Made by a program: the position numbers and the translations under genes
Virus record (IMG/VR): IMGVR_UViG_3300033997_000243
Coordinates: 248,001 to 312,000 of that record
Length of the DNA: 64,000 nt
Strand: one strand, 5' to 3'
Shown here: positions 6,314 to 60,177 of the stretch, piece by piece
Layout: the number at the start of each line of letters is the position of its first letter
Numbering within the stretch: position 1 is the stretch's first letter
Notes under the pieces: model-generated
The model's input: only the letters and a program-made list of their open reading frames with translations
Told to the model about the DNA's origin: nothing
The model's database searches: none

Positions 6314-9262
6314 TTATTTTCCTGTTCGTTTTACACCAATGAATTTTGTCGAACCCGAATAAGTTTTGTTTCCGGTTGTAACAGTAAGTGCATTCATTCC
6401 GCCCGTGAGTTTTTTCAACAGTGCTAACGGTGGCTGAACTTTCTTACTTTCAACCTCACCAACCAAATGCTCTTGATAATCTGGATTAGTTAAACCAAAA
6501 TAACAAAGCGCGGCTGCTCTCCAAAGATCATCGGTGAATCCATTTCCTTTTTCAACAGATTTCTTACCAACATCAACAACGGTTGCAAGTTGCAACAGCA
6601 AATGATGTACAGGTCTACCTTCAAAACACGCTGGATAATCATCGAGGTTACTAGCAAGGATATTTTTAATGCTAGGATCTTCAATGTTTGGTATTTTGAA
6701 TTGACCCATTTCAATAGCTGTTTTAACTTCGTACATATCGTTGTAGCGTAAGCTATATTGACCTGACACTTTTAAACTATCATAGGTGGCTTGAGCATCT
6801 TGCAATAACTTGATACTATTCCAACGGTCTGCTAGAAGTATACTGCAATTGCGCTGTTCAATAAGTGGAAGTACAGCATCTGCAAAAACAGAAGTGAAAC
6901 TTATTGGAATACCAGGAAGAGCATTTATTTCTAAAAGGCAATCCATGTGAGGAATACCATCATGCAAAGATCCACAGACTATGGCAAAACAGTTGTTAGA
7001 GAATCCAGCATCAATAGCCATAACACTCCTAGAACCATTTTGTTTGACGTTAAGTAACTCAACGGTTCTGTGCTTTTCGTCTCGACTGATACGAATAGTT
7101 TTGAGCGCATATTTAACCCAATTTTTACCGCTAGTTCTAACAGTCTCTTCAAGTAATCTGTGATTACTCATAAACGGATTACTTGATAAACTTGGCTCGG
7201 CTCCAAAGTCTCGTGCAGCTCCAATAGGATCTTTACGATATTCTTCACGTATCAATTCACCATCAAATGGAATATGTGGATTCATTTTCCATGTTGGACG
7301 ATGAAGGCCAAGCATCTTACGACTGCCCAAACTTTGTTTATAAAGTTCCATGATTTTGTCACGGATGTTATTTGGAGAACTTACGTTCAACATATATCCG
7401 GTTAACATGAATTGATCAAAGCCTTGTTCGACTAAACGCTTTTCACTTTGTCTGGCAGTAGCCAAACTGTTTGACATTGCTTTATAAACTTCGTGCGCGT
7501 TATCCTTAACTTTTTTACTATCACGATTAGAGTCAAACCACCCAAGTTCATCCAGGGCTCCGAGTATACGAGTACGACCACGAAGTACACGTTTGTCTGG
7601 AGTTGCCGGATAAAGTTTAAGGTTTCTATGACGATAATCAATAAAGGTATCTTTTAGCTTTAGTAGAACTTCTCCGTATTTCTTTTCATAACGACGAAGC
7701 ATTAAGTGATAAGCTTTAAACCAAGGACTATTATTTATGTAACCGAGAAAAGGTTCCCATAAGTTTTGTGTTGCTTGTCCAAGTGTAAGTGCAAGGAAAG
7801 TTCCATGCAATATTTCGTTATTACGAATATTGAAAAGTTCAGTTGGTTTACCACACATCAAAAACAAATGCACTATATAAGCACTTATCATGGTAACAAC
7901 CGCAGACTTGCCGCTGTTATGTGAATCAATGCCATTGGTAATAAAATGTTGTGTGATAGGCATTGTAACATCGTACATGACTTCAGTTCTATCTGTAACT
8001 CCGCAGCTAACAACGGATAAAAGATGCCGATTTCTTTTGACGGATCTGTGATCATCAAATAATATATTTCGGTTTTCGTTTGAGATAGAAATGGAGATTG
8101 TTTCTGAGGTATTTTGAATTGTAGGCAGAATGCCAATGTTTAGCAGCAAGGCATAAACATCTTTTACTAATTGGCGGTAAGCAATAGGATATTGCGTTGT
8201 GTTGTTGTCGAATATTCCACGTAGAAATTCTCGACAATTTTTCATACTATATTTTAAAAGATCTGGATGTAAGCCTTTACCATCCACTGTATCGACCAAC
8301 AAGTCTAGTCGATTTGTAATATCAGATCCTATAGAGCGTAATTCATCAACTGTATAAGGGCAGTTTAAATTTCCCCAACAATTTTGTCCGGTTTGTACAA
8401 CAACTTGCTCACCAGCTTTTATTTGGTGCAAAGCACGATAACCAAACTTTTCAACACGAACAGGATGGTCAAGAGTTCCACTTAAAGTAGATCCATTATC
8501 CAGCTGTAGTGTGTAAACGTGTTCGGCTTTCGTTATATAAAATTCTTTTGTTGTCTCAAGCTTTTCACCGTTGAATACAGGATATTTAAAATCATTGTAA
8601 CCCTGTTTAGCATTGCGCGGAACAAGATCTCCAATTCTTTCAATACCTTTTCCAGTGAAAATATGAGTATCGCCAGTAACACAACGCTGTCCAGCAACAA
8701 CTACAAGTTCGTTATAGAAATTTAGTTCACCACTTGCAATAAGTTCGGATTTACGTGCGCCACACTTTGGACAAACACCATGATGCAAAAGAGACACTTT
8801 TCTGGAAAGTGTTGCTAATGGTTCATCTGCCGAGTGTCCATCATCAGAAAACCATTTTAAATCAGAACATTCAGGTCTTGGACAATACTCAGCAAAAAGT
8901 TTGATACCTATTATGGCCTGTTCGAGATAAGGCGTGGAACTAAGAAAACTTTCATCGTTAGCAAACTGTAAGAAGTTTTTTGCTATCGGCATAGAACTGT
9001 CATCTATACGCAAATCTTTAGAGATCGGCCTAGCATTATCCAGTTCATCATATATAAGTTGTTCGAGATCTAAGACTTCATGGCCATCTTCTAAATCATG
9101 CTTAAAATGATGGCCATCATCGTCGTCATCGTCGTCATGTACTATTGTGACGCTTTCATCGTCATCTTCACCCAACAAATTGAATAAATCATCTAATGGT
9201 TTAATTGCACTAGGTTTTTTGGCTTTACCTATTGGCTTCTTTTTCTTTATCTGCTTTACCAT
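6314..9262 (-). CDS. terL: terminase large subunit with intein
   Basis: Spliced Walker A VVAGQR|SGKS, Walker B LGALDELGW, VSSP coupling motif, RNase H-like nuclease AIDAG...ADRWN...DDLWRA. Confidence 0.9.
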   Translation of the reverse strand: MVKQIKKKKPIGKAKKPSAIKPLDDLFNLLGEDDDESVTIVHDDDDDDDGHHFKHDLEDGHEVLDLEQLIYDELDNARPISKDLRIDDSSMPIAKNFLQFANDESFLSSTPYLEQAIIGIKLFAEYCPRPECSDLKWFSDDGHSADEPLATLSRKVSLLHHGVCPKCGARKSELIASGELNFYNELVVVAGQRCVTGDTHIFTGKGIERIGDLVPRNAKQGYNDFKYPVFNGEKLETTKEFYITKAEHVYTLQLDNGSTLSGTLDHPVRVEKFGYRALHQIKAGEQVVVQTGQNCWGNLNCPYTVDELRSIGSDITNRLDLLVDTVDGKGLHPDLLKYSMKNCREFLRGIFDNNTTQYPIAYRQLVKDVYALLLNIGILPTIQNTSETISISISNENRNILFDDHRSVKRNRHLLSVVSCGVTDRTEVMYDVTMPITQHFITNGIDSHNSGKSAVVTMISAYIVHLFLMCGKPTELFNIRNNEILHGTFLALTLGQATQNLWEPFLGYINNSPWFKAYHLMLRRYEKKYGEVLLKLKDTFIDYRHRNLKLYPATPDKRVLRGRTRILGALDELGWFDSNRDSKKVKDNAHEVYKAMSNSLATARQSEKRLVEQGFDQFMLTGYMLNVSSPNNIRDKIMELYKQSLGSRKMLGLHRPTWKMNPHIPFDGELIREEYRKDPIGAARDFGAEPSLSSNPFMSNHRLLEETVRTSGKNWVKYALKTIRISRDEKHRTVELLNVKQNGSRSVMAIDAGFSNNCFAIVCGSLHDGIPHMDCLLEINALPGIPISFTSVFADAVLPLIEQRNCSILLADRWNSIKLLQDAQATYDSLKVSGQYSLRYNDMYEVKTAIEMGQFKIPNIEDPSIKNILASNLDDYPACFEGRPVHHLLLQLATVVDVGKKSVEKGNGFTDDLWRAAALCYFGLTNPDYQEHLVGEVESKKVQPPLALLKKLTGGMNALTVTTGNKTYSGSTKFIGVKRTGK
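7916..8683 (-). mobile_element. intein (256 aa) in terminase Walker A, degenerate LAGLIDADG remnant
   Basis: Starts CVTGDT, block B GTLDHPV, block F MYDVTM, ends NGIDSHN followed by Ser. Confidence 0.92.
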
Positions 9263-10034
9263 CACGAATTACCTTAGATTTTTTCATTCCAACGCCAGCA
9301 ACATATCCGGCAGGATTGTCCAGTCTTTCTTGGTAACGTCTGTGCTGTTGAGCCGCAAGATTATTTTTAGCTAGATAACGCGCAGATGCAAGAGCATCAG
9401 TTACATAACCTATAATATAAGCTTGTCGGGTTTCTTCACTTAGGTTAGTCAATTGTTTTAGGATAAGGCTAACGAAATCAGTCTTGATCGCGTTATGAAT
9501 ATATGGAATCATATCAACGCTTATCTCAAATTCAGATAAGCCGAGTCCGTCTTTTGCAAATGCCTCTACATAAGCAGAAGCTTCATCAATACCTAAAATT
9601 TGAGGAAGATATTCTTTTATAAAAACATCTTTTATCAAACCTGATTTAGTTTGAAGTATTTTAGGAAAGTTTTTTATATGGGCAGTTTTTAAACGTATCA
9701 GATTGTCAGGTGGAGAAATATCAACTTCGATGTCAACTTCCTGCATGACTTCTTTTTGTTCGGCTGTTCGTTTGTAGCGAGAAAGTTTGCTGAGATCTAC
9801 AGTTGTATATTTTTGTTGAATAAAATCTTGTTCAAAGCTTTCTTCGACAACAACTTGTTTGGCTTCAGGTGGGCGGATTACAATGTGGCATACAGGTTGA
9901 AACCTTGGAAGCTTTTTGACTTTGACCGTTTGACCGTGTATATAAGGTTCACACAAAGATTCTTCTATTTCAACCAAGGGTATTGTATGTTCTGGCAATA
10001 CTCCATAAGGACTATTTTCTGGTGAACTAAACAT
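9225..10034 (-). CDS. hypothetical protein upstream of terL
   Basis: 269 aa ORF. Confidence 0.75.
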   Translation of the reverse strand: MFSSPENSPYGVLPEHTIPLVEIEESLCEPYIHGQTVKVKKLPRFQPVCHIVIRPPEAKQVVVEESFEQDFIQQKYTTVDLSKLSRYKRTAEQKEVMQEVDIEVDISPPDNLIRLKTAHIKNFPKILQTKSGLIKDVFIKEYLPQILGIDEASAYVEAFAKDGLGLSEFEISVDMIPYIHNAIKTDFVSLILKQLTNLSEETRQAYIIGYVTDALASARYLAKNNLAAQQHRRYQERLDNPAGYVAGVGMKKSKVIRDGKADKEKEANR

Positions 10035-29301: not shown

Positions 29302-29350
29302 ATTATACTAAAAGTGGCCGCTCATAACAACCACTATTTTTGACACACTT
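29302..29350 (-). promoter_or_regulatory. class I promoter module with embedded terminator hairpin
   Basis: GTGTGTCAAAAA-N29-TATAAT; TTGTTA-17-TATAAT; AGUGGUUGUU/AGCGGCCACU-UUU. Confidence 0.88.
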
Positions 29351-29419: not shown

Positions 29420-29477
29420 ATTATATCAAAAGTGGCCGCTCATAACAACCACTATTTTTGACACACCTCGATCAGTT
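29420..29477 (-). promoter_or_regulatory. class I promoter module (tandem duplicate)
   Basis: Near-identical copy of 29302-29350. Confidence 0.88.
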
Positions 29478-34917: not shown

Positions 34918-35072
34918 TTAGATTCTCTCTTTGATTCAAGGCTTTTAGGATCTACACCCAAAGCCATTAACTTGCGCTCATACAATTTCATCAAGCGTTT
35001 GTGCTCTACGAGCTTTTGCTTAAGACGTTTGTTGAGCTTGCGTTTTGATTCACAACCTAAACAAGCACACAT
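34914..35072 (-). CDS. small Cys/basic protein (52 aa, below ORF-track cutoff)
   Basis: MCACLGCESKRKLNKRLKQKLVEHKRLMKLYERKLMALGVDPKSLESKRESK fills the gap exactly; ATGA overlap. Confidence 0.7.
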   Translation of the reverse strand: MCACLGCESKRKLNKRLKQKLVEHKRLMKLYERKLMALGVDPKSLESKRESK

Positions 35073-35074
35073 AT

Positions 35075-35647
35075 TTAACGTGAGCTATAAACAGAAGCAG
35101 AGTAAAGCTTCTGGAGTTCTTCACCCGCATCTGAGATATAATCCATAACATGGCGTTTCGCCAAATCATGAAAGTGTCTTTGAATGCGAGTGCAGAAATT
35201 TTTGTTGTAGGTAAGAAAAGTACCGGAGTCCAGATCAAACCAAACAACATTACGTAAATCGTTGTTCTCGCTTTGAGGTAAACAAAAAGCGCAGTCAGAG
35301 TTTTCCACAGTCTTTTTGCGGTACGCTGATATAGTTTCCTGAAGATCCAGCAAATAATCCGCATCAATCGGCTGACTTTGGTTCAAAGGTAAAGCACGTA
35401 AATACCACACGCTGCTTTGCTCAGACTTTTTCTCAGGAACAACGATTTCACGATTCAAACTAAAATCCAATATTGGATTTTCATTATTCAATAAAATACT
35501 ACGCAACATAACATCGTTGGCTTTATTGAAAGCATCCAACTTATCGTTGCGAGTTTGGGCCGGACGAATTACGTCACGCATTGTTGCAGGAATAGATTTC
35601 CATTCCGAATCCCAACGGTGATTAAAAATATAAGACACTAACTGCAT
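35075..35647 (-). CDS. hypothetical protein
   Basis: 190 aa, AGGAG RBS, CAFC...C..H. Confidence 0.8.
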   Translation of the reverse strand: MQLVSYIFNHRWDSEWKSIPATMRDVIRPAQTRNDKLDAFNKANDVMLRSILLNNENPILDFSLNREIVVPEKKSEQSSVWYLRALPLNQSQPIDADYLLDLQETISAYRKKTVENSDCAFCLPQSENNDLRNVVWFDLDSGTFLTYNKNFCTRIQRHFHDLAKRHVMDYISDAGEELQKLYSASVYSSR

Positions 35648-52212: not shown

Positions 52213-52656
52213 CTAACTTGGATGTTTTATTTTCAGTGCTTTTTTAATTGCGCGTGTTAAAGAAGGAGAAAGCCTCGGAGCTTCTTTAACTTTGGTTCCA
52301 GATAAAATCATTATCTTGCCTTTATCGGGATTTGATATGCGATCAATCAAAGCACTGAGTTCGGCAGGTTTTAATTTTTCATCGGAAAGATCGACAGATA
52401 GAATTTCGTATTCTTCAATTTGCTGCAAAGTCATTTCATTGGTAGGTAGGAAAGTAATCTCAGTAACAAGATCTTTATCAATGAATACGCTTGAAAATAC
52501 GCGAACGGTAGCTTGTCCTGCTTCGGCCACTATTCGATTTTTATCCGCAGAACTAAGTTCTGCAAAATCAGAAAGTTTTCGATAGGCTTCGGCCATTGTC
52601 CAACGCACACCAGAAAATGTGAGTCTAGGGCTGTTTAAGTGGCATAATATTCTCAT
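52213..52656 (-). CDS. hypothetical protein
   Basis: 147 aa, ATGA overlap with tmk. Confidence 0.75.
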   Translation of the reverse strand: MRILCHLNSPRLTFSGVRWTMAEAYRKLSDFAELSSADKNRIVAEAGQATVRVFSSVFIDKDLVTEITFLPTNEMTLQQIEEYEILSVDLSDEKLKPAELSALIDRISNPDKGKIMILSGTKVKEAPRLSPSLTRAIKKALKIKHPS

Positions 52657-53288
52657 ACATCACCAAAAGCTTTACGCGCACACATTAAAATCATTTCCGC
52701 AGTATCTTCAATACTAACTCCATTTATGTCGAAAGTGACTAAACTTTTCGCAACAGTATGATCCATATTGCTAAGAGCAAACATGCGGTCATATTCGGCA
52801 CCAATCTTTTCTCTGAACTCAAAATACTCAAACTCAATTCGATCTTCAGGCTCTTTTACTTTGCCTGAGTTAGTTCCGTAAAAAATCATATCAGGAACCA
52901 AGGTATCTAAACTCAGTATTTTACGCAGGTTATAAAAGTGCTCAAGTGGAAAACCTTTACCTCCACACTGAAAAGCTCTTGTTGAAAAATCCCAACGATC
53001 TGCAACAACATTAACGCCAGCGGCAAGTTGTGATCTTACGTAAGGAACCAATTGCGCTCTGGCAGCAAACATTAAAAGAGTTTCTGCTTCTACAGTAAAC
53101 TTTTCATCAGAGTTATTAGCATTACCTTTTACCACAGTACGTATCTGTTCTGCAATCGGAGTTCCTCCAGGTTCGCGTACTTGAATAGTCGGGCCAAATA
53201 TTTTAGTAAGATTTGCCGTCAATATTTTTGCTTGTTCACTTTTACCAACACCATCCAATCCTTCAAGTACAAAAAATTTACCTTGCAT
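52653..53288 (-). CDS. tmk: thymidylate kinase
   Basis: MQGKFFVLEGLDGVGKS, REPGGT, ETLLMFAARAQ, VVADRW; start moved to ATG 53288. Confidence 0.93.
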   Translation of the reverse strand: MQGKFFVLEGLDGVGKSEQAKILTANLTKIFGPTIQVREPGGTPIAEQIRTVVKGNANNSDEKFTVEAETLLMFAARAQLVPYVRSQLAAGVNVVADRWDFSTRAFQCGGKGFPLEHFYNLRKILSLDTLVPDMIFYGTNSGKVKEPEDRIEFEYFEFREKIGAEYDRMFALSNMDHTVAKSLVTFDINGVSIEDTAEMILMCARKAFGDV

Positions 53289-53310
53289 AGTTATTTCCCC
53301 AGTTAAGATC

Positions 53311-53336
53311 AAAAAAGGCCACAGCAAAGTGGCCTT
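53311..53336 (-). terminator. intrinsic terminator closing the structured-RNA island
   Basis: AAGGCCAC/GTGGCCTT plus U6 on minus strand. Confidence 0.8.
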
Positions 53337-53342
53337 GTGTTT

Positions 53343-54356
53343 AATAGATTTTTGTTCTGACGGCAAAACGCAACAGACTGTAATATGTACTGGTGCTCGA
53401 ACAAAGCCAGTGCGAAAGTTGAATCTTACCGTCAGAACAAAAATCTATTTTATTCGGTGGGTTTGTTTTCCTTGTCCAAAATGCGAACAACAAACCCACC
53501 TGCTGGATTATTTAATATCGGTATTGCGGCTACCGAGATTTGTTCTTACCCTCTCAACAAGATAAGGAGTCATGTAAATAACAAATCGCCAAGCATCATA
53601 TCAACGAGTGCTTATAGTGAGCAGGTTTATGCTCCACTTGTACAACGCGAACAGTTAACCAACCTTTAAGGTCAAAGTAATCTGTTATACGTTGAATGTT
53701 GGTTGATATGCGAAAACTTTCTACGGATGACCGCCGTAAATTGTTTTCGCGGTTAATACAAATCGTTAGAAAAAAGATGAATAGAGTTACCATGAATATT
53801 CCTGTATAGCGGCATTTCAAATACACGACCCAAGAATTGAAGCAAGGAAAAAAGTCCAAAAACCTACAACAATTCAAAGTCTAAACATTGCTTAATGTTA
53901 GATTAAGGTTTGTACTCTCAGCGGGAGTTCGCGTCAGCACGTTCATGTTTTGAAATAACGAATGAGTGCGTGAGATACTCACAATACTAACCGACTTGGA
54001 GGGACGCAAGTATTGTCTCGTTGTTTTTCCTCTATAAGTTCATCAGCACAGCGGCAAGGAAGAATCCGCCTCACACAAAACTTTTTCAAGGACTGCTTAA
54101 ACTAATGCCGCGAAAAATTAGAATGCCTGTTCGACACAACTTGCTTGGAACCCCACGTACCTAAAAGGAGATCGAACAGACAAAGATGTTAAAGGAGATT
54201 CCACTAAAAATCTCGAAGTTAGGCTACTTCGTATAAAGTCTAGTCAAGGGATCTAGCTTGACATAATAAACTTTGCACTGCATACCAGCGCACAAGCAAC
54301 GGCTGTTCTGACCTAAGACAAAAAATGTCTCTGCTTGCAGATCTAAAGTGGAATCT
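53343..54356 (-). ncRNA. candidate large structured ncRNA(s), ~1 kb
   Basis: No credible CDS. Contiguous stems including a 21-bp perfect IR (53343-63/53429-49), a 12-bp IR (53456-67/53489-500) and a 10-bp IR (54196-205/54347-56); G-U extensions mostly favour the minus strand. Confidence 0.65.
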
Positions 54357-54687
54357 ACTTTAACATATTCAAAATATCTTCAAATTCTTCTGTAGTCAAT
54401 TGGTTTCGTTCAACTAAAATTTTCATGTAATTCAAATACAAACCTTTTGAGTAAGAAGTTTGGGCTATCAAGAATTCTACTTCAGGCCAACGACATTTCT
54501 TTTCGCGCAAAACAATTAAAGCGCATCTGTAAGGTATTCTATTTGGAGGCAAAGAAGTTAAAGCTTGCTTAAGCGTTGTAAATCTTCGCATCTGACTCCA
54601 ATAAAAAGCGCAGAATTTTTCTTTGTTGTTAAGTTCAAGAAAATGTTTAGAATAAAATTCAGGGCAATTTAAAAACTCTGGTTCCAT
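54355..54687 (-). CDS. hypothetical protein inside RNA island
   Basis: 110 aa ORF, RWPEVEFLI motif. Confidence 0.7.
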   Translation of the reverse strand: MEPEFLNCPEFYSKHFLELNNKEKFCAFYWSQMRRFTTLKQALTSLPPNRIPYRCALIVLREKKCRWPEVEFLIAQTSYSKGLYLNYMKILVERNQLTTEEFEDILNMLK

Positions 54688-54705
54688 AAATGATTACCAA
54701 ATAAA

Positions 54706-54819
54706 GATTCCTGTTCAGTGATACACTTAAACCACCAACTTTTCATAGTCTCCTACGCGGCTAAGTGCATGACTATCTTAAGTTACTTAGCTAACTGAAA
54801 TAAGTTTAGTGTTGGAATC
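54706..54819 (-). ncRNA. candidate structured RNA domain
   Basis: Nested GATTCC/GGAATC, ACACT(T)AAAC/GTTTAGTGT, TTTCA/TGAAA, TAGTC/GACTA, AGTTA/TAACT. Confidence 0.45.
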
Positions 54820-54906
54820 AAAAACTTAGCGCAATCAAAATAACAAAAACTAAAACAAGAGAAAGCAGATAGGGTTTTAATTCTGAATAATCTGGAAGCA
54901 TTTTTG

Positions 54907-55000
<94 letters not shown>

Positions 55001-55019
<19 letters not shown>

Positions 55020-55390
55020 CATGGAAAGTCACTGAAAAGCAATTTCAACAAACAGCCTCTAGTGGAAAGCATTACACTATAACCATCTATCTTATATGCT
55101 TTGATAAACGTGATCAGATCGCCAATCAGATTCGGTGGCGCTAATACAAAACAAAGAATTTCTCATGACAGCTACTCACGTATCTCGCATGTCGATGCAA
55201 ACGAATAAACTTGTTTTGTAAAACCAGTCTTGCGACCAGAAACAGCACTTAGAGGACGCTAGAGTGCCGAAATAAAAAAGACCGTAAGAAATTCTTACAC
55301 AAACTATCGGAAAGGATGTAGCGCAGACACAATCCAGTTCCTGAGTTTAGTTGCCAAACAAATACATGCAAAGTTTGGCAGGTCAGGGAA
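55001..55390 (-). ncRNA. candidate structured RNA upstream of tRNA
   Basis: Non-coding; stems CCATGTTT/AAACATGG, AAAGCAT/ATGCTTT, TACAAAACAA/TTGTTTTGTA, AAGAATTTCT/AGAAATTCTT, TGCCAAAC/GTTTGGCA. Confidence 0.5.
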
Positions 55391-55392
55391 AT

Positions 55393-55815
55393 CTATATAC
55401 TGTCTTTTATAGACAGAACTATACGGGCTTCGCCAGTTGTGACTATCTTAACTGCGGTTACAAGATGTTCAATGGATTCCATTTTAGTTTCACCAGCTGG
55501 AATTCCGGTAAGCAGATCAGATAACATCCAATCGGCTGTAATAAATTTTTCCTGTGTTTCCCCATCAGCCGGAAGATCAGGAATATTCGCAAGTTTTATA
55601 TCAGAAGCTGTGTAGAAAATATCTGTTGTTCCACTTATACTGTGAGCCTGCATGGTAAGAAATGAATAATTCTGTGGAACCAACAAAATAAAATCTTTTG
55701 TTGGATCAGATGGAACATGGTGAGTAAAAATATTTTTGTTGACTTTTAAACTGGCACTTACGTCACCAAGTTGTTCTAAAAACTTTTTACTATTTACTAA
55801 AACTATAGGTTTCAT
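55393..55815 (-). CDS. hypothetical protein inside RNA island
   Basis: 140 aa, AAGG RBS. Confidence 0.75.
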   Translation of the reverse strand: MKPIVLVNSKKFLEQLGDVSASLKVNKNIFTHHVPSDPTKDFILLVPQNYSFLTMQAHSISGTTDIFYTASDIKLANIPDLPADGETQEKFITADWMLSDLLTGIPAGETKMESIEHLVTAVKIVTTGEARIVLSIKDSI

Positions 55816-55835
55816 TTGAGTGTACCTTAATGAAG

Positions 55836-55961
55836 TGCTGGTGCGGAAAGCTAGAAGTTCAGGTTTAATGTTCTACTTTCACCCCTAAACCAAAAGCCTT
55901 GTGAGTGTAATAACAAACTGAGTGAGTTATGTTTAAATTACCTAACATTTCCGCACCAGCA
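55836..55961 (-). ncRNA. candidate 126-nt RNA closed by a perfect 14-bp stem
   Basis: TGCTGGTGCGGAAA (55836-49) / TTTCCGCACCAGCA (55948-61). Confidence 0.55.
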
Positions 55962-55967
55962 AAACTT

Positions 55968-56309
55968 TTAAGATGACTTTTTAGCCGACAGTTTTGGTAA
56001 GCCGAAATTATCTAACAAACTATCCAGCTTTGATATACGATTTACAGTTTCCTCTGAGCGCTCGTCGATGCAGATAAGAATGTTATCGCGGTGCTGGATC
56101 AACTCTTCAATGTAGCCGACCAATTGATCCAGTTTTAAGTTTGCCGTACTTTCTTTCAAACGTGTTTTAACATTTGAAATAGTAGAATCGTAACTAAGAT
56201 CAAAATGATCTTCAGCAAAAGTAATGAGATCAGAAACTTGTTGACGAGCCTTAACCAGCTTTGCATTTAAAGAAGCACGATCAATTTGAACAGATAATTG
56301 TTGCAACAT
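55968..56309 (-). CDS. coiled-coil hypothetical protein
   Basis: 113 aa, AGGA RBS. Confidence 0.75.
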   Translation of the reverse strand: MLQQLSVQIDRASLNAKLVKARQQVSDLITFAEDHFDLSYDSTISNVKTRLKESTANLKLDQLVGYIEELIQHRDNILICIDERSEETVNRISKLDSLLDNFGLPKLSAKKSS

Positions 56310-57945: not shown

Positions 57946-60177
57946 TTATTCGTCATCAGTATCGATTTTTTCTTTACTGCGTTTGACGATTTGATCTTTG
58001 TAGCGTTTCGGGCCTTTTCCACTTGCACAATGTTTAGAACACCATGTACGAATGTTTCCAGCTTTCTTCAAACCAACTCGCTCACAAACTTCGGTGATTT
58101 GTTTTTTACTACCAAGAACAAGAACTTTGAAATCTTCAAAGCTTAATTTTTTCGCACCATGCAGTGGAACATCTGGATGGAACTTTAAGTTGTTTCTTGT
58201 TCCATCTACATACCCAAGTTGTTTTAAATACTCAAAGGTATCAAAAACTGGATCGAATCCACGAGCACGACCGTCACCATCAGTAACCCAAACACGCGCC
58301 CAAACTTCACGGTTAGGAATACCACCGAGTTTGTTTTTGACAGTACGCAAACAGATGAAACGATAAATATCTTTACCGCCTTCAACAGTCACAGAATTTT
58401 CTTCCATGATACCTTTATCAAGAACAAAACCGTAAGGTGCAGATCCACGAGAAGTAGATTTTATACGAACGTCTGAGTTATGGCTAACAATTCCGTTAGT
58501 GATAATTGTATGCGTGTCAGGCATGTTTGCATCGTAAGTCTGCTCAGCTTCTTGATATTCAATATCGACAATTTCGTCAGTAAGATAATCGACATCGCAA
58601 GAAAGATCCAAGACAGAAACAGTATAAAAGTTCTCTACCTTTTCTAACTTTGAAAATACACAACTATCAAGAAGTAGTAACTGGAAATCTACTGCGTGTT
58701 GGTAGTGTCTGTGGGTATTAGTTACAGAACTATATCCTTTAATATAAGCACTAACAAGATCGGAAGATCCTGTCCTTATATTAAATGGAACTCCATGTAA
58801 GGAATCCAACTGACCTAAACCTACCTTGACGCCTGTATTATAAGCATCTTGATAATCAAGATCAGAATTGCTTGATACAGGTCTAGTAATTTCGTTTGAT
58901 GGTTTAATCAAAACAAATTTACCAACAGTCAAAGAATCAAGTCTAGCAAATTGATAGTTACTTGGTGATTTAGCTTGGTCATTAGCTAAAACCTGATGTC
59001 CATGTTTGCCGCGCAGTGTATAGCCATTTGATGTAGTAATTTTAATGATATTATCTACACCAGTATCGTCGAAGATTGTCGGAGATTCCAAACCGCATTT
59101 ACCTTGAATTTTAGGTAAAGAGTGTCTGAATTTTTCGTAGTATTCTTCAACAGATACCAACCCAAGTTCTGTTCTGATTCGAGTTTCAGGTGCCAGACAG
59201 AAAAATTTGAGCGCTTCCCCGGAAGGCTCATACTCAGGATTACCGTGCATAACAGCAGGACGTAAACGTAATTGGTTTACACCAAAAACAGTCATACGTT
59301 TTTTACGCATACCGCTTCGTACTTTTTTAATACCAGCAGCGTGCATACGTGCTTGTTCTGCCATAGCTTCATTACGATCATCATCATCTAAGCCTTCAGG
59401 CAACATGGCCGGATAACTATCAACGATTGATACTGCTTGCATAAAGCCATCTGGAGCAGGAATACGAATTTTATTTGTTTTAGTCAAATACTTGACATCG
59501 TACTTACCAGAAAACTTCTTTTTGTTTTCTTGCGTATGTTCGTAAACATACCAATACTTATCACCGATTTTTTGTACGTCAGGCAGTGCGCGACGAAGTT
59601 TTGCTTGGTAACGATAAAAATCTTCGCCAACATCAGGCATGTAGTAACGAATTTTTGGTTTAATCAACCAAGAACCAGTATCGTCATCTTTGATACCGAA
59701 TATTGTAGTAGCATCAGATTTTAATCCAAGCGCTTCCATCATGTTACCGATATATTCAATGTCGGTAGAGCCTTCGTAATCAAAAATACTGGCAGCAATT
59801 TTTCTGTTTAATTCATCAATAGCATTCTGAATCATACAGAGAAGAGTCATTGTCAATGTCGATTTACAGCTTTGTTCACCACCATAAATAGTGTACCAAC
59901 CGCCACCAACAATACCGCCATTAAGAAGTAAATCAAGAGCCAACAGCCCTGTGGACAATCTTTTTTCATCACGGTCAACCAAACTGCTTGAAAGGCCATA
60001 TTTCTTTTCAACACCATCAAGCAAATCATCGATGTCGTCAGCAGGAGAATAACCACGAGCATCTTCAATAGCAGAGTCTACAATTTCTTTGGCAGACTTG
60101 CCTTTTGATTTACCCTTTTTCTTTGACTCTTCTACAGCAACGTCATCATCAATGTCTAACTTTTTCTTTTTAGCCAT
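57946..60177 (-). CDS. recA: RecA/UvsX recombinase with intein
   Basis: STGLLALDLLLNGG, IYGGEQSCKST, IVDS, MAEQARM, VNQLR, GNPEYEPSGEALKFF|SDVR, VKNK. Confidence 0.93.
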   Translation of the reverse strand: MAKKKKLDIDDDVAVEESKKKGKSKGKSAKEIVDSAIEDARGYSPADDIDDLLDGVEKKYGLSSSLVDRDEKRLSTGLLALDLLLNGGIVGGGWYTIYGGEQSCKSTLTMTLLCMIQNAIDELNRKIAASIFDYEGSTDIEYIGNMMEALGLKSDATTIFGIKDDDTGSWLIKPKIRYYMPDVGEDFYRYQAKLRRALPDVQKIGDKYWYVYEHTQENKKKFSGKYDVKYLTKTNKIRIPAPDGFMQAVSIVDSYPAMLPEGLDDDDRNEAMAEQARMHAAGIKKVRSGMRKKRMTVFGVNQLRLRPAVMHGNPEYEPSGEALKFFCLAPETRIRTELGLVSVEEYYEKFRHSLPKIQGKCGLESPTIFDDTGVDNIIKITTSNGYTLRGKHGHQVLANDQAKSPSNYQFARLDSLTVGKFVLIKPSNEITRPVSSNSDLDYQDAYNTGVKVGLGQLDSLHGVPFNIRTGSSDLVSAYIKGYSSVTNTHRHYQHAVDFQLLLLDSCVFSKLEKVENFYTVSVLDLSCDVDYLTDEIVDIEYQEAEQTYDANMPDTHTIITNGIVSHNSDVRIKSTSRGSAPYGFVLDKGIMEENSVTVEGGKDIYRFICLRTVKNKLGGIPNREVWARVWVTDGDGRARGFDPVFDTFEYLKQLGYVDGTRNNLKFHPDVPLHGAKKLSFEDFKVLVLGSKKQITEVCERVGLKKAGNIRTWCSKHCASGKGPKRYKDQIVKRSKEKIDTDDE
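58477..59199 (-). mobile_element. intein (241 aa) in RecA, degenerate LAGLIDADG remnant
   Basis: Starts CLAPETRI, block B G..GHQV, block F TYD, ends NGIVSHN followed by Ser. Confidence 0.92.

What the first reader, a model, noticed from the sequence alone, without database searches (positions are those of the whole stretch)
54196..54356. 161-nt five-way-junction RNA domain
Seen (minus strand): closing stem AGAUUCCACU/AGUGGAAUCU encloses arms GCAAGCAG/UUGCUUGU (with inner AGACA/UGUCU), GCGCUG/CAGUGC, AAAGUUUA/UAGACUUU (with inner GUCAAG/CUUGAC) and CGAAGU/ACUUCG, leaving almost no unpaired linker. Three arms need G-U pairs that would be A-C on the plus strand. Inference: a compact folded RNA, such as a tRNA-like mimic, ribozyme or protein-binding domain.
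Basis: partly seen in the sequence, partly recalled or inferred. Interest (0 to 1): 0.65.

Follow-up and report, generated by a model that had tools for sequence, protein, structure and literature searches.

The report
Folded domain of large phage RNA
The 161-base element is a real folded RNA module that opens a roughly 1-kb structured non-coding RNA lying beside a tRNA gene in an uncultivated giant phage; this RNA matches no catalogued family and recalls the mysterious "ornate" phage RNAs GOLLD and ROOL.

Summary
On the minus strand, 54196-54356 folds exactly as described: -61.3 kcal/mol, z -7.2, against -44.9 on the plus strand. The closing helix runs further out than reported (54182-54370, z -8.0) into the last codons of the upstream 110-aa gene. 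It is the longest inverted repeat in the 64-kb window.

Four distinct versions from two phage lineages keep all 57 pairs. Three pairs show compensatory changes and about eight show G-U-mediated one-sided changes. Loops and junctions are nearly invariant.

The element does not stand alone. It is the first domain of a ~1.05-kb gene-free stretch (54370-53316) that is more conserved than the flanking genes, is full of covarying helices, and ends at an intrinsic terminator in front of tmk. More distant jumbo-phage relatives keep the order tRNA(s), ~1-1.4 kb non-coding RNA, tmk, and share loop motifs over covarying stems. At the position of this domain they carry other multiway junctions closed by ~25-27-bp helices.

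No Rfam family matches (GOLLD, ROOL, tRNA, ribozymes). A homologue of the 110-aa gene occurs elsewhere without the RNA.

Best reading: a variable 5' module of a new, rare, tRNA-linked large phage RNA. Its function is unknown, and its long closing helix is a likely processing or insulating clamp.

The parts
54182..54370 (-). Whole helix-closed domain, including the outer extension of the closing helix (an interrupted helix of about 28 bp enclosing four arms).
   Evidence: The 193-nt fold is -72.7 kcal/mol, z -8.02. The alignment fold of 4 versions keeps it. It is the longest inverted repeat in the window.
54196..54356 (-).
- P1b: 54347-54356 with 54196-54205.
- P1c: 54339-54344 with 54208-54213.
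- Arm 1: 54292-54338 (inner hairpins 54315-54331 and 54301-54313).
- Arm 2: 54275-54291.
- Arm 3: 54235-54274.
- Arm 4: 54214-54231.
   Evidence: All 57 pairs are kept in 4 distinct sequences. Arms 1, 2 and 3 are supported by substitutions. P1b, arm 4 and the 3-bp hairpin never vary.
54355..54687 (-). 110-aa gene (ORF110). Its last three codons and its stop codon form the 5' strand of the closing helix. It is an insert specific to this lineage.
   Evidence: Differences by codon position are 22/15/38. There is no Pfam or PHROG match. The AF2 model has pLDDT 94.7, is all-alpha, and has no fold match. It is absent from L063-L065. A homologue occurs elsewhere without the RNA.
54921..54995 (-). tRNA-Gly(UCC), the tRNA gene that heads the locus.
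   Evidence: Relatives carry tRNA-Met plus tRNA-Gly or tRNA-Arg at the same place.
54123..54183 (-). Hairpin with a conserved apical GGGGUUCC motif, 13 nt after the domain. It is the first element of the core shared by all lineages.
   Evidence: In six sequences, 7 of the 9 stem pairs show compensatory double changes while the loop motif is invariant.
53921..54029 (-). A 109-nt block with a single difference between the two lineages, whose ORF110 proteins are only 72% identical.
   Evidence: Invariant columns 1372-1480 of alignment A3.
53810..53960 (-). Second multibranch domain, closed by a predicted 15-bp long-range helix (53943-53960 with 53810-53828).
   Evidence: Alignment fold. The helix strands are invariant, so the helix itself is untested. 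The inner hairpin 53880-53902 has 2 compensatory pairs.
53616..53638 (-). Hairpin inside the conserved GUACAA...CAUAA.CC motif shared with distant relatives.
   Evidence: Two compensatory pairs across 4 sequences.
53343..53449 (-). Long 3' hairpin (stem of about 27 bp) with the conserved internal GUACAUAUUACA motif.
   Evidence: z -8.1 here, and z -4.0 to -7.5 for the counterparts in L063, L064 and L065, whose stem sequences are entirely different. It is the second-longest inverted repeat in the window.
53316..53335 (-). Intrinsic terminator (GC-rich hairpin plus U run), the probable 3' end of the RNA, 27 nt before the tmk start codon.
   Evidence: Equivalent terminators occur in L063 and L065.
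52653..53288 (-). Thymidylate kinase gene (211 aa from the ATG at 53288), the conserved downstream neighbour.
   Evidence: Pfam PF02223. Gene calls in relatives agree.

Best explanation
The element is a genuine, independently folding RNA domain read from the minus strand. It is the 5'-proximal, lineage-variable module of a ~1.05-kb multi-domain non-coding RNA (about 54370 to 53316).

What is shown:
- The fold, its strand specificity, and its conservation.
- Membership in a conserved, structured, gene-free interval shared by a small clade of jumbo phages.

What is inferred:
- The RNA is co-transcribed with the phage tRNA gene(s) and stops at the intrinsic terminator in front of tmk.
- The long closing helix (about 28 bp here, 25-27 bp in relatives) works as a clamp. 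It lets the junction fold independently of the flanking sequence. Because it is double-stranded over more than two helical turns, it probably also serves as an endonucleolytic (RNase III-type) processing site. Cleavage there would separate the ORF110 message, the module and the conserved core.
- The nearly invariant loops and junction nucleotides (CAGAACA, GUAUG, CUAGAUCC, AGCCUA) make tertiary or intermolecular contacts.

By context and organisation (next to tRNAs, about 1 kb, variable 5' part, conserved 3' part, no protein partner evident), the whole RNA behaves like the ornate phage RNAs GOLLD and ROOL. It is not a member of either family.
For: - Fold: MFE -61.3 kcal/mol, z -7.16. With the extended helix, -72.7 kcal/mol, z -8.0.
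- Strand: the minus strand beats the plus strand by 16 kcal/mol.
- Conservation, window versus L012: non-coding segments are 84-90% identical, ORF110 is 77.5%, and neighbouring genes are 65-86%.
- Pairing: all 57 pairs are kept in 4 distinct versions, with 3 double-change pairs and about 8 G-U-mediated single changes.
- Substitution test, using the structure predicted from the window sequence alone: 13 of 14 substitutions fall in paired columns, yet only 2 pairs break, against about 5 expected (P about 0.01-0.03).
- The downstream 907 nt: 279 predicted pairs, 19 of them with compensatory changes.
- Relatives: those with a 50-58% identical Nudix-like neighbour keep the order tRNAs, 1-1.4 kb non-coding, tmk. 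They share loop motifs over covarying stems.
- At the domain's position they carry 231-305-nt multiway junctions closed by 25-27-bp helices.
Against: - Only two independent lineages carry this particular 161-nt domain, so covariation statistics are weak (19-29 of 500 shuffles reach the observed score).
- The closing helix, arm 4 and the 3-bp hairpin never vary, so they are untested.
- There are no transcript data. Co-transcription, processing and stability are all inferred.
- Homology between this domain and the closed domains of distant relatives is not shown. The covariance model finds only an 11.7-bit match in L063, no better than plain hairpins score.
- The domain is so far seen only together with ORF110.
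Confidence: 0.55

Rival explanations
1. The element is a 3'-UTR device of the ORF110 message. In this reading it is a structured end, or an RNase III site, that stabilises or destabilises that mRNA. The models are the RNase III sites of T7 early mRNAs and lambda sib retroregulation. It would have no role in the downstream RNA.
For: The closing helix begins inside the last codons and the stop codon of ORF110. The domain and ORF110 are found only together, in the same two lineages.
Against: - A stem alone would do this job. Four arms with invariant loops are more than it needs.
- The ORF110 homologue in L074 ends with an ordinary terminator hairpin.
- Relatives without ORF110 have helix-closed junctions at the same place.
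- No terminator separates the domain from the conserved core, which starts 13 nt later.
Confidence: 0.2
2. The whole 1-kb structured interval, this domain included, is a giant cis-acting leader that controls tmk expression through the terminator just upstream of tmk (attenuation).
For: The terminator lies 27 nt before the tmk start codon. The RNA-then-tmk adjacency is kept in all relatives.
Against: - No known leader approaches 1 kb.
- No alternative anti-terminator pairing is evident.
- The whole region is syntenic, so the adjacency may simply be inherited gene order.
- The RNA is linked to tRNA genes as much as to tmk.
Confidence: 0.1
3. The element is a tRNA-like mimic or a self-cleaving ribozyme.
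For: It is a compact multiway junction next to a tRNA gene.
Against: ARAGORN and the Rfam tRNA model do not see it. No ribozyme family matches at E<=10. It has no T-loop or D-loop motifs and no CCA-like 3' end.
Confidence: 0.05
4. The element acts at the DNA level: a cruciform, a miniature inverted-repeat element, or an origin or packaging signal. The RNA fold would then be incidental.
For: It has a perfect 10-bp terminal inverted repeat, and it is the longest inverted repeat in the window.
Against: - Six G-U pairs become A-C mismatches on the other strand, and the plus strand folds 16 kcal/mol worse.
- The substitutions run through G-U intermediates.
- The window holds no second copy.
- There is no presence/absence polymorphism and there are no iterons.
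Confidence: 0.03

Closest known systems
GOLLD RNA (Rfam RF01998)
   Same: It is encoded by phages and prophages, often next to or containing tRNA genes. [quoted passage not shown] The RNA here is about 1.05 kb, follows tRNA genes, and has a swappable 5' domain with a conserved 3' core.
   Different: The Rfam model gives no match at E<=10 in the window or in relatives. The sequence motifs are unrelated. The RNA here is known only from a handful of metagenomic jumbo-phage contigs. Oligomerisation has not been tested.
ROOL RNA (Rfam RF03087)
   Same: It is a large structured RNA of phages and prophages, often found near tRNA islands, and its function is unknown (10.1101/2024.12.08.627333).
   Different: There is no covariance-model match. 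ROOL is about 580 nt (from my own knowledge) and rich in pseudoknots. No pseudoknot has been demonstrated here.
Phage T4 RNAC and RNAD (stable RNA species 1 and 2)
   Same: They are small stable phage RNAs of unknown function (PMC9697503). They are encoded beside the T4 tRNA gene cluster and processed from the same precursor (from my own knowledge).
   Different: There is no sequence similarity: T4-like genomes match the 2.2-kb query only over tRNA-Gly. The T4 RNAs are about 120-140 nt, not a 1-kb multi-domain RNA.
RNase III processing helices (rRNA operon stalks, T7 early-mRNA sites, lambda sib)
   Same: They are double-stranded stems of two or more helical turns, often with a small internal loop, that bracket or follow a functional RNA and are cut to release it (established knowledge). 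The closing helices here are 25-28 bp with small internal loops.
   Different: Cleavage has not been tested. The host and its RNase III are unknown. Known sites usually enclose either nothing or a whole rRNA, not a 140-nt four-arm junction.

Membership tests
GOLLD RNA | Match to the family covariance model (conserved 3' domain). | tested here: not met
   Rfam 15 scans at E<=10 of window 53300-55500, L063 12100-13900 and L067 6200-8950 gave no GOLLD hit. Scans at the gathering threshold of the window and 5 loci found only tRNAs.
GOLLD RNA | Phage-encoded, adjacent to tRNA genes, over 800 nt, variable 5' region and conserved 3' region. | tested here: met
   The contigs are jumbo-phage contigs. 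tRNAs lie directly upstream. The gene-free intervals are 1.0-1.4 kb. The 5' closed domain differs between lineages while the core motifs are shared.
ROOL RNA | Match to the family covariance model. | tested here: not met
tRNA or tRNA-like structure | Cloverleaf with D- and T-loop signatures, recognised by ARAGORN or Rfam RF00005. | tested here: not met
   Only 54921-54995 is called as a tRNA.
Known self-cleaving ribozymes and group I/II introns | Match to an Rfam family model. | tested here: not met
   There is no such hit at E<=10.
Known self-cleaving ribozymes and group I/II introns | Self-cleavage or splicing activity. | not testable with these tools
   This needs an in-vitro transcript assay.
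RNase III processing helix | About 20 bp or more of double-stranded RNA, often with an internal loop. | tested here: met
   The predicted helix runs 3 + 9 + 10 + 6 bp, interrupted by one-nucleotide gaps and a 2x2 loop. Relatives have helices of 25-27 bp.
RNase III processing helix | Cleavage by RNase III in vivo or in vitro. | not testable with these tools
   No transcript data exist.
T4 RNAC/RNAD | Sequence similarity to the T4 RNAs. | tested here: not met
   The distant blastn of 53300-55500 against 50,697 phage records matched T4-like phages only over tRNA-Gly.
Ribonucleoprotein with the adjacent 110-aa protein | The protein and the RNA co-occur across homologues. | tested here: not met
   The L074 homologue lacks the RNA. 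The relatives L063-L065 have closed domains without the protein.

The most novel reading that the evidence does not exclude
The ~1.05-kb tRNA-linked RNA is a new class of ornate phage RNA that works without protein. Like GOLLD and ROOL, it may self-assemble into a higher-order particle. Its helix-clamped 5' junction is an exchangeable peripheral module, and the invariant palindrome-containing loop CUAGAUCC could mediate RNA-RNA contacts.
Probability: 0.2. Interest if true: 0.85.

Novelty: new variant of a known kind. Interest (0 to 1): 0.62.

Why it matters
Large, highly structured bacterial and phage RNAs with no assigned function are few (GOLLD, ROOL, OLE, raiA and a handful more). Each new one has opened structural and functional questions.

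This locus adds a candidate from an uncultivated jumbo-phage clade with the same telling context: it is tRNA-linked and has a variable 5' part and a conserved 3' part. It also gives a concrete modular picture of helix-clamped multiway junctions swapped in front of a conserved core.

If the RNA is stable and processed as proposed, it offers a compact test case. The questions it could address are how phages build and excise structured RNA modules from tRNA operons, and whether tRNA-linked ornate RNAs share a function.

Tried and rejected
- **Rfam.** Scans at the gathering threshold and at E<=10 found nothing but tRNAs.
- **Public phage genomes.** The distant blastn matched only tRNA-Gly. There is no close cultured relative by protein either.
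- **Exact and gapped DNA-pattern scans.**
  - Viral contigs.
  - Metagenome contigs.
  - GTDB genomes.
  - All hits were either the already known contigs or chance matches.
- **Covariance model R1 of the domain.** It found no second copy in the window, in 24 candidate viral loci, or in the distant relatives. With filters off, the best match was an 11.7-bit, 131-nt hit right after tRNA-Gly in L063. That is no better than plain hairpins score, so homology is inconclusive.
- **Thymidylate kinase homologues at 40% identity.** They turned out to be bacterial yceG-tmk-holB loci.
- **ORF110.**
  - It has no Pfam, PHROG or PDB sequence match.
  - The first AF2 model was poor.
  - The second is confident (pLDDT 94.7) but has no meaningful fold match: Foldseek E>1, and VIA-align top Z 5.8 to generic helical repeats.
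- **MAFFT alignment of the 3' long hairpin across clades.** It misaligned and gave no consensus. Single-sequence folds were used instead.
- **DNA-level repeats.** No iterons or direct repeats suggest an origin.

Full report
**1. Where the window comes from**

The window belongs to a 319,518-bp viral contig, IMGVR_UViG_3300033997_000243. All sizeable genes lie on the minus strand. They include topoisomerase II, a UvsX-like recombinase carrying an intein, a Nudix-like protein and thymidylate kinase. There is no close cultured relative. It is an uncultivated jumbo phage.

**2. The observation**

- The same fold survives in a 501-nt context.
- The fold adds a 6-bp continuation of the closing stem behind a UU/UU internal loop, and a 3-bp hairpin in arm 1.
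- The window copy has six G-U pairs.
- The plus strand reaches only -44.9 kcal/mol. On the alignment, the consensus fold has z -6.2 on the minus strand and -3.9 on the plus strand.
- The helix also extends outward. 54358-54366, the last codons of the upstream gene, pairs with 54186-54194. This gives an interrupted helix of about 28 bp, and the 193-nt piece folds at -72.7 kcal/mol, z -8.0.
- This is the longest inverted repeat with arms within 450 nt anywhere in the 64 kb.

**3. Comparative evidence for the domain**

The near-identical relatives (L002, L006, L008, L009) give no information. A second lineage does. It comprises L005, L012, L069 and L070, found through the 110-aa protein (72% identical) and through the thymidylate kinase (90% identical).

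Identity between the window and L012 by segment:

| Segment | Identity |
|---|---|
| The domain | 90% |
| Other non-coding segments | 84-90% |
| ORF110 | 77.5% |
| Neighbouring genes | 65-86% |

Pairing evidence:
- Four distinct versions keep all 57 consensus pairs; all 225 pair cells are paired.
- In the three-sequence alignment, three pairs in arm 1 (one in helix 2, two in helix 3) change on both sides.
- About eight pairs in arms 1-3 and in the closing stem change on one side through G-U.
- With partners slid by 1-3 columns, only 35-43% of cells pair.

A non-circular test used the structure predicted from the window sequence alone. Of 14 substitutions, 13 fall in paired columns, yet only 2 pairs break, against about 5 expected (P about 0.03 for L012 and 0.01 for L005, which are not independent).

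Loops and junctions are almost invariant.

Limits of this evidence:
- There are only two independent lineages.
- The shuffle control is reached in 19-29 of 500 trials.
- The closing helix, arm 4 and the 3-bp hairpin never vary.

**4. The domain is the first part of a larger RNA**

- From the end of the domain to the start codon of tmk (53288) there are 907 nt with no conserved reading frame.
- Gene callers place a 94-aa ORF on the opposite strand in some contigs (L007, L008) but not in L005, L006 or L012.
- The alignment fold of this stretch predicts 279 pairs, 19 of them with compensatory changes.
- A 109-nt block (53921-54029) differs at one position between the lineages.
- The stretch ends with a 107-nt hairpin (z -8.1) and an intrinsic terminator at 53316-53335.
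- No terminator separates the domain from the next hairpin, which begins 13 nt later.

**5. More distant relatives**

I searched with the Nudix-like neighbour and found contigs with 50-58% identical proteins: L063 (a 286-kb JGI contig), L064, L065 and L067.

They keep this gene order:

1. UvsX.
2. The Nudix-like gene.
3. Small genes.
4. tRNA genes: Met plus Gly, or Met plus Arg.
5. 1.0-1.4 kb without genes.
6. tmk.

blastn sees no similarity outside the tRNAs. The alignments nevertheless show shared motifs in the same order:
- An apical GGAAGGGGUUCC hairpin.
- UUUCG...UUAGUUUA.
- AAAACAAC.
- G(A/G)UCGUGUA.
- GUACAA...CAUAA.CC.
- GUACAUAUUACA inside a long 3' hairpin.
- A terminator.

The stems under these motifs covary:
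- 7 of the 9 pairs of the GGGGUUCC hairpin show double changes across six sequences.
- The GUACAA hairpin has 2 compensatory pairs.
- The 3' hairpin has wholly different stem sequences but the same shape (z -4.0 to -8.1).

At the position of the 161-nt domain, immediately 5' of the GGGGUUCC hairpin, the relatives carry other closed junctions:
- L063 and L065 have a junction of about 300 nt closed by a 25-27-bp helix, with 2 compensatory pairs in that helix.
- L064 has a 231-nt junction closed by about 27 bp.

So a helix-clamped multiway junction is a conserved architectural slot, and its content varies. Whether the contents are homologous is open. The covariance model of the window domain scores only 11.7 bits on a 131-nt element after tRNA-Gly in L063, no better than plain hairpins score.

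**6. How widespread the family is**

A motif pattern spanning two core motifs returns exactly three contigs from 2.9 million viral contigs. From 185,579 species genomes it returns only chance hits. Including Logan and ENA contigs, about ten contigs are known. The family is rare.

**7. The 110-aa gene**

- Differences concentrate at third codon positions (22/15/38), so it is a real gene.
- It has no Pfam, PHROG or PDB relative.
- With seven sequences, AF2 gives a confident eight-helix model (pLDDT 94.7) that has no informative fold match.
- It is absent from the distant relatives.
- Its closest outside homologue (48% identical) lies in a different phage context and is followed by an ordinary terminator hairpin.
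- In L005, a degenerate tRNA remnant sits just upstream of it. The remnant is half deleted in L012 and gone in the window.

The gene therefore looks like a lineage-specific insert in the variable slot between the tRNAs and the RNA core. It does not look like a dedicated partner of the domain.

**8. Comparison with known classes**

- No Rfam 15 family matches at E<=10 in the window or in relatives, apart from tRNAs.
- GOLLD and ROOL are the closest in kind. They are phage-encoded, lie near tRNA islands, and have unknown function. [quoted passage not shown] Membership fails on the defining model match.
- T4 RNAC and RNAD are tRNA-cluster RNAs of unknown function (PMC9697503; their location is from my own knowledge). 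They share no sequence with this RNA.
- The long closing helices fit the general form of RNase III substrates (established knowledge). Cleavage is untested.

**9. Verdict**

- Shown: a real, strand-specific, conserved RNA fold that forms the 5' module of a conserved, structured, tRNA-linked interval of about 1.05 kb in a small clade of jumbo phages.
- Inferred: co-transcription with the tRNA, termination before tmk, the closing helix acting as a clamp and processing site, and tertiary or intermolecular roles for the invariant loops.
- Unknown: the function.

It is best filed as a new variant of the tRNA-linked large structured phage RNAs.

Noticed in passing
L005:289-337 (aligned just upstream of window 54687): A 49-nt tRNA remnant (acceptor stem, T arm and CCA, but no anticodon arm) sits immediately before ORF110 in L005. 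It is half deleted in L012 and absent from the window. This suggests a second tRNA gene decaying at this spot.
   Followed up: partly
window 54907-54919 and 55007-55019: A perfect 13-nt direct repeat flanks tRNA-Gly. A similar trailer motif follows tRNA-Met in L063 and L065. The 400-nt conserved non-coding stretch upstream of tRNA-Gly (54996-55392, 90% identical to L012) may hold the remains of another tRNA unit.
   Followed up: no
window 55812-55972 (-): The spacer between the 113-aa and 140-aa genes folds into another helix-closed element: a 13-bp GC-rich closing stem enclosing two arms. Its z is -5.0 alone, and -8.8 on the two-sequence alignment.
   Followed up: partly
window 53921-54029 (-): A 109-nt block is virtually invariant between lineages whose adjacent protein is only 72% identical, yet it has only modest predicted secondary structure. 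It is a candidate functional core or tertiary-contact region of the large RNA.
   Followed up: partly
window 54312-54315 and 54220-54223 (-); 54249-54256 (-): Loop 4 (CCUA) is complementary to UAGG at the arm-1 junction, a possible pseudoknot. Loop 3 (CUAGAUCC) contains the palindromes CUAG and GAUC. All of these are invariant, so they cannot be tested by covariation.
   Followed up: no
window 29314-29346 and 29432-29464 (-): Two identical copies of a 33-nt element (a hairpin followed by a TATAAT-like box) lie 118 nt apart in a 490-nt spacer. They may be repeated promoters.
   Followed up: partly
window 35051-35210 (-): This is the most strongly structured 160-nt window in the scan (z about -14 with 15 shuffles), lying at or within the start of the 190-aa gene.
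   Followed up: no
window 57946-60177 (-); L064, L065, L067: The UvsX-like recombinase carries an intein (Pfam Intein_splicing). The relatives carry inteins with LAGLIDADG domains of different sizes.
   Followed up: no
L067:6272-6401 and 8848-10026: A tRNA hit 130 nt long (an insertion or intron?) is followed by an HNH-like ORF. The tmk gene of this contig appears split into pieces.
   Followed up: no
window 53385-53669 (+): Public gene calls place a 94-aa ORF antisense to the structured RNA in some near-identical contigs (L007, L008) but not in L005, L006 or L012. It is probably spurious.
   Followed up: partly
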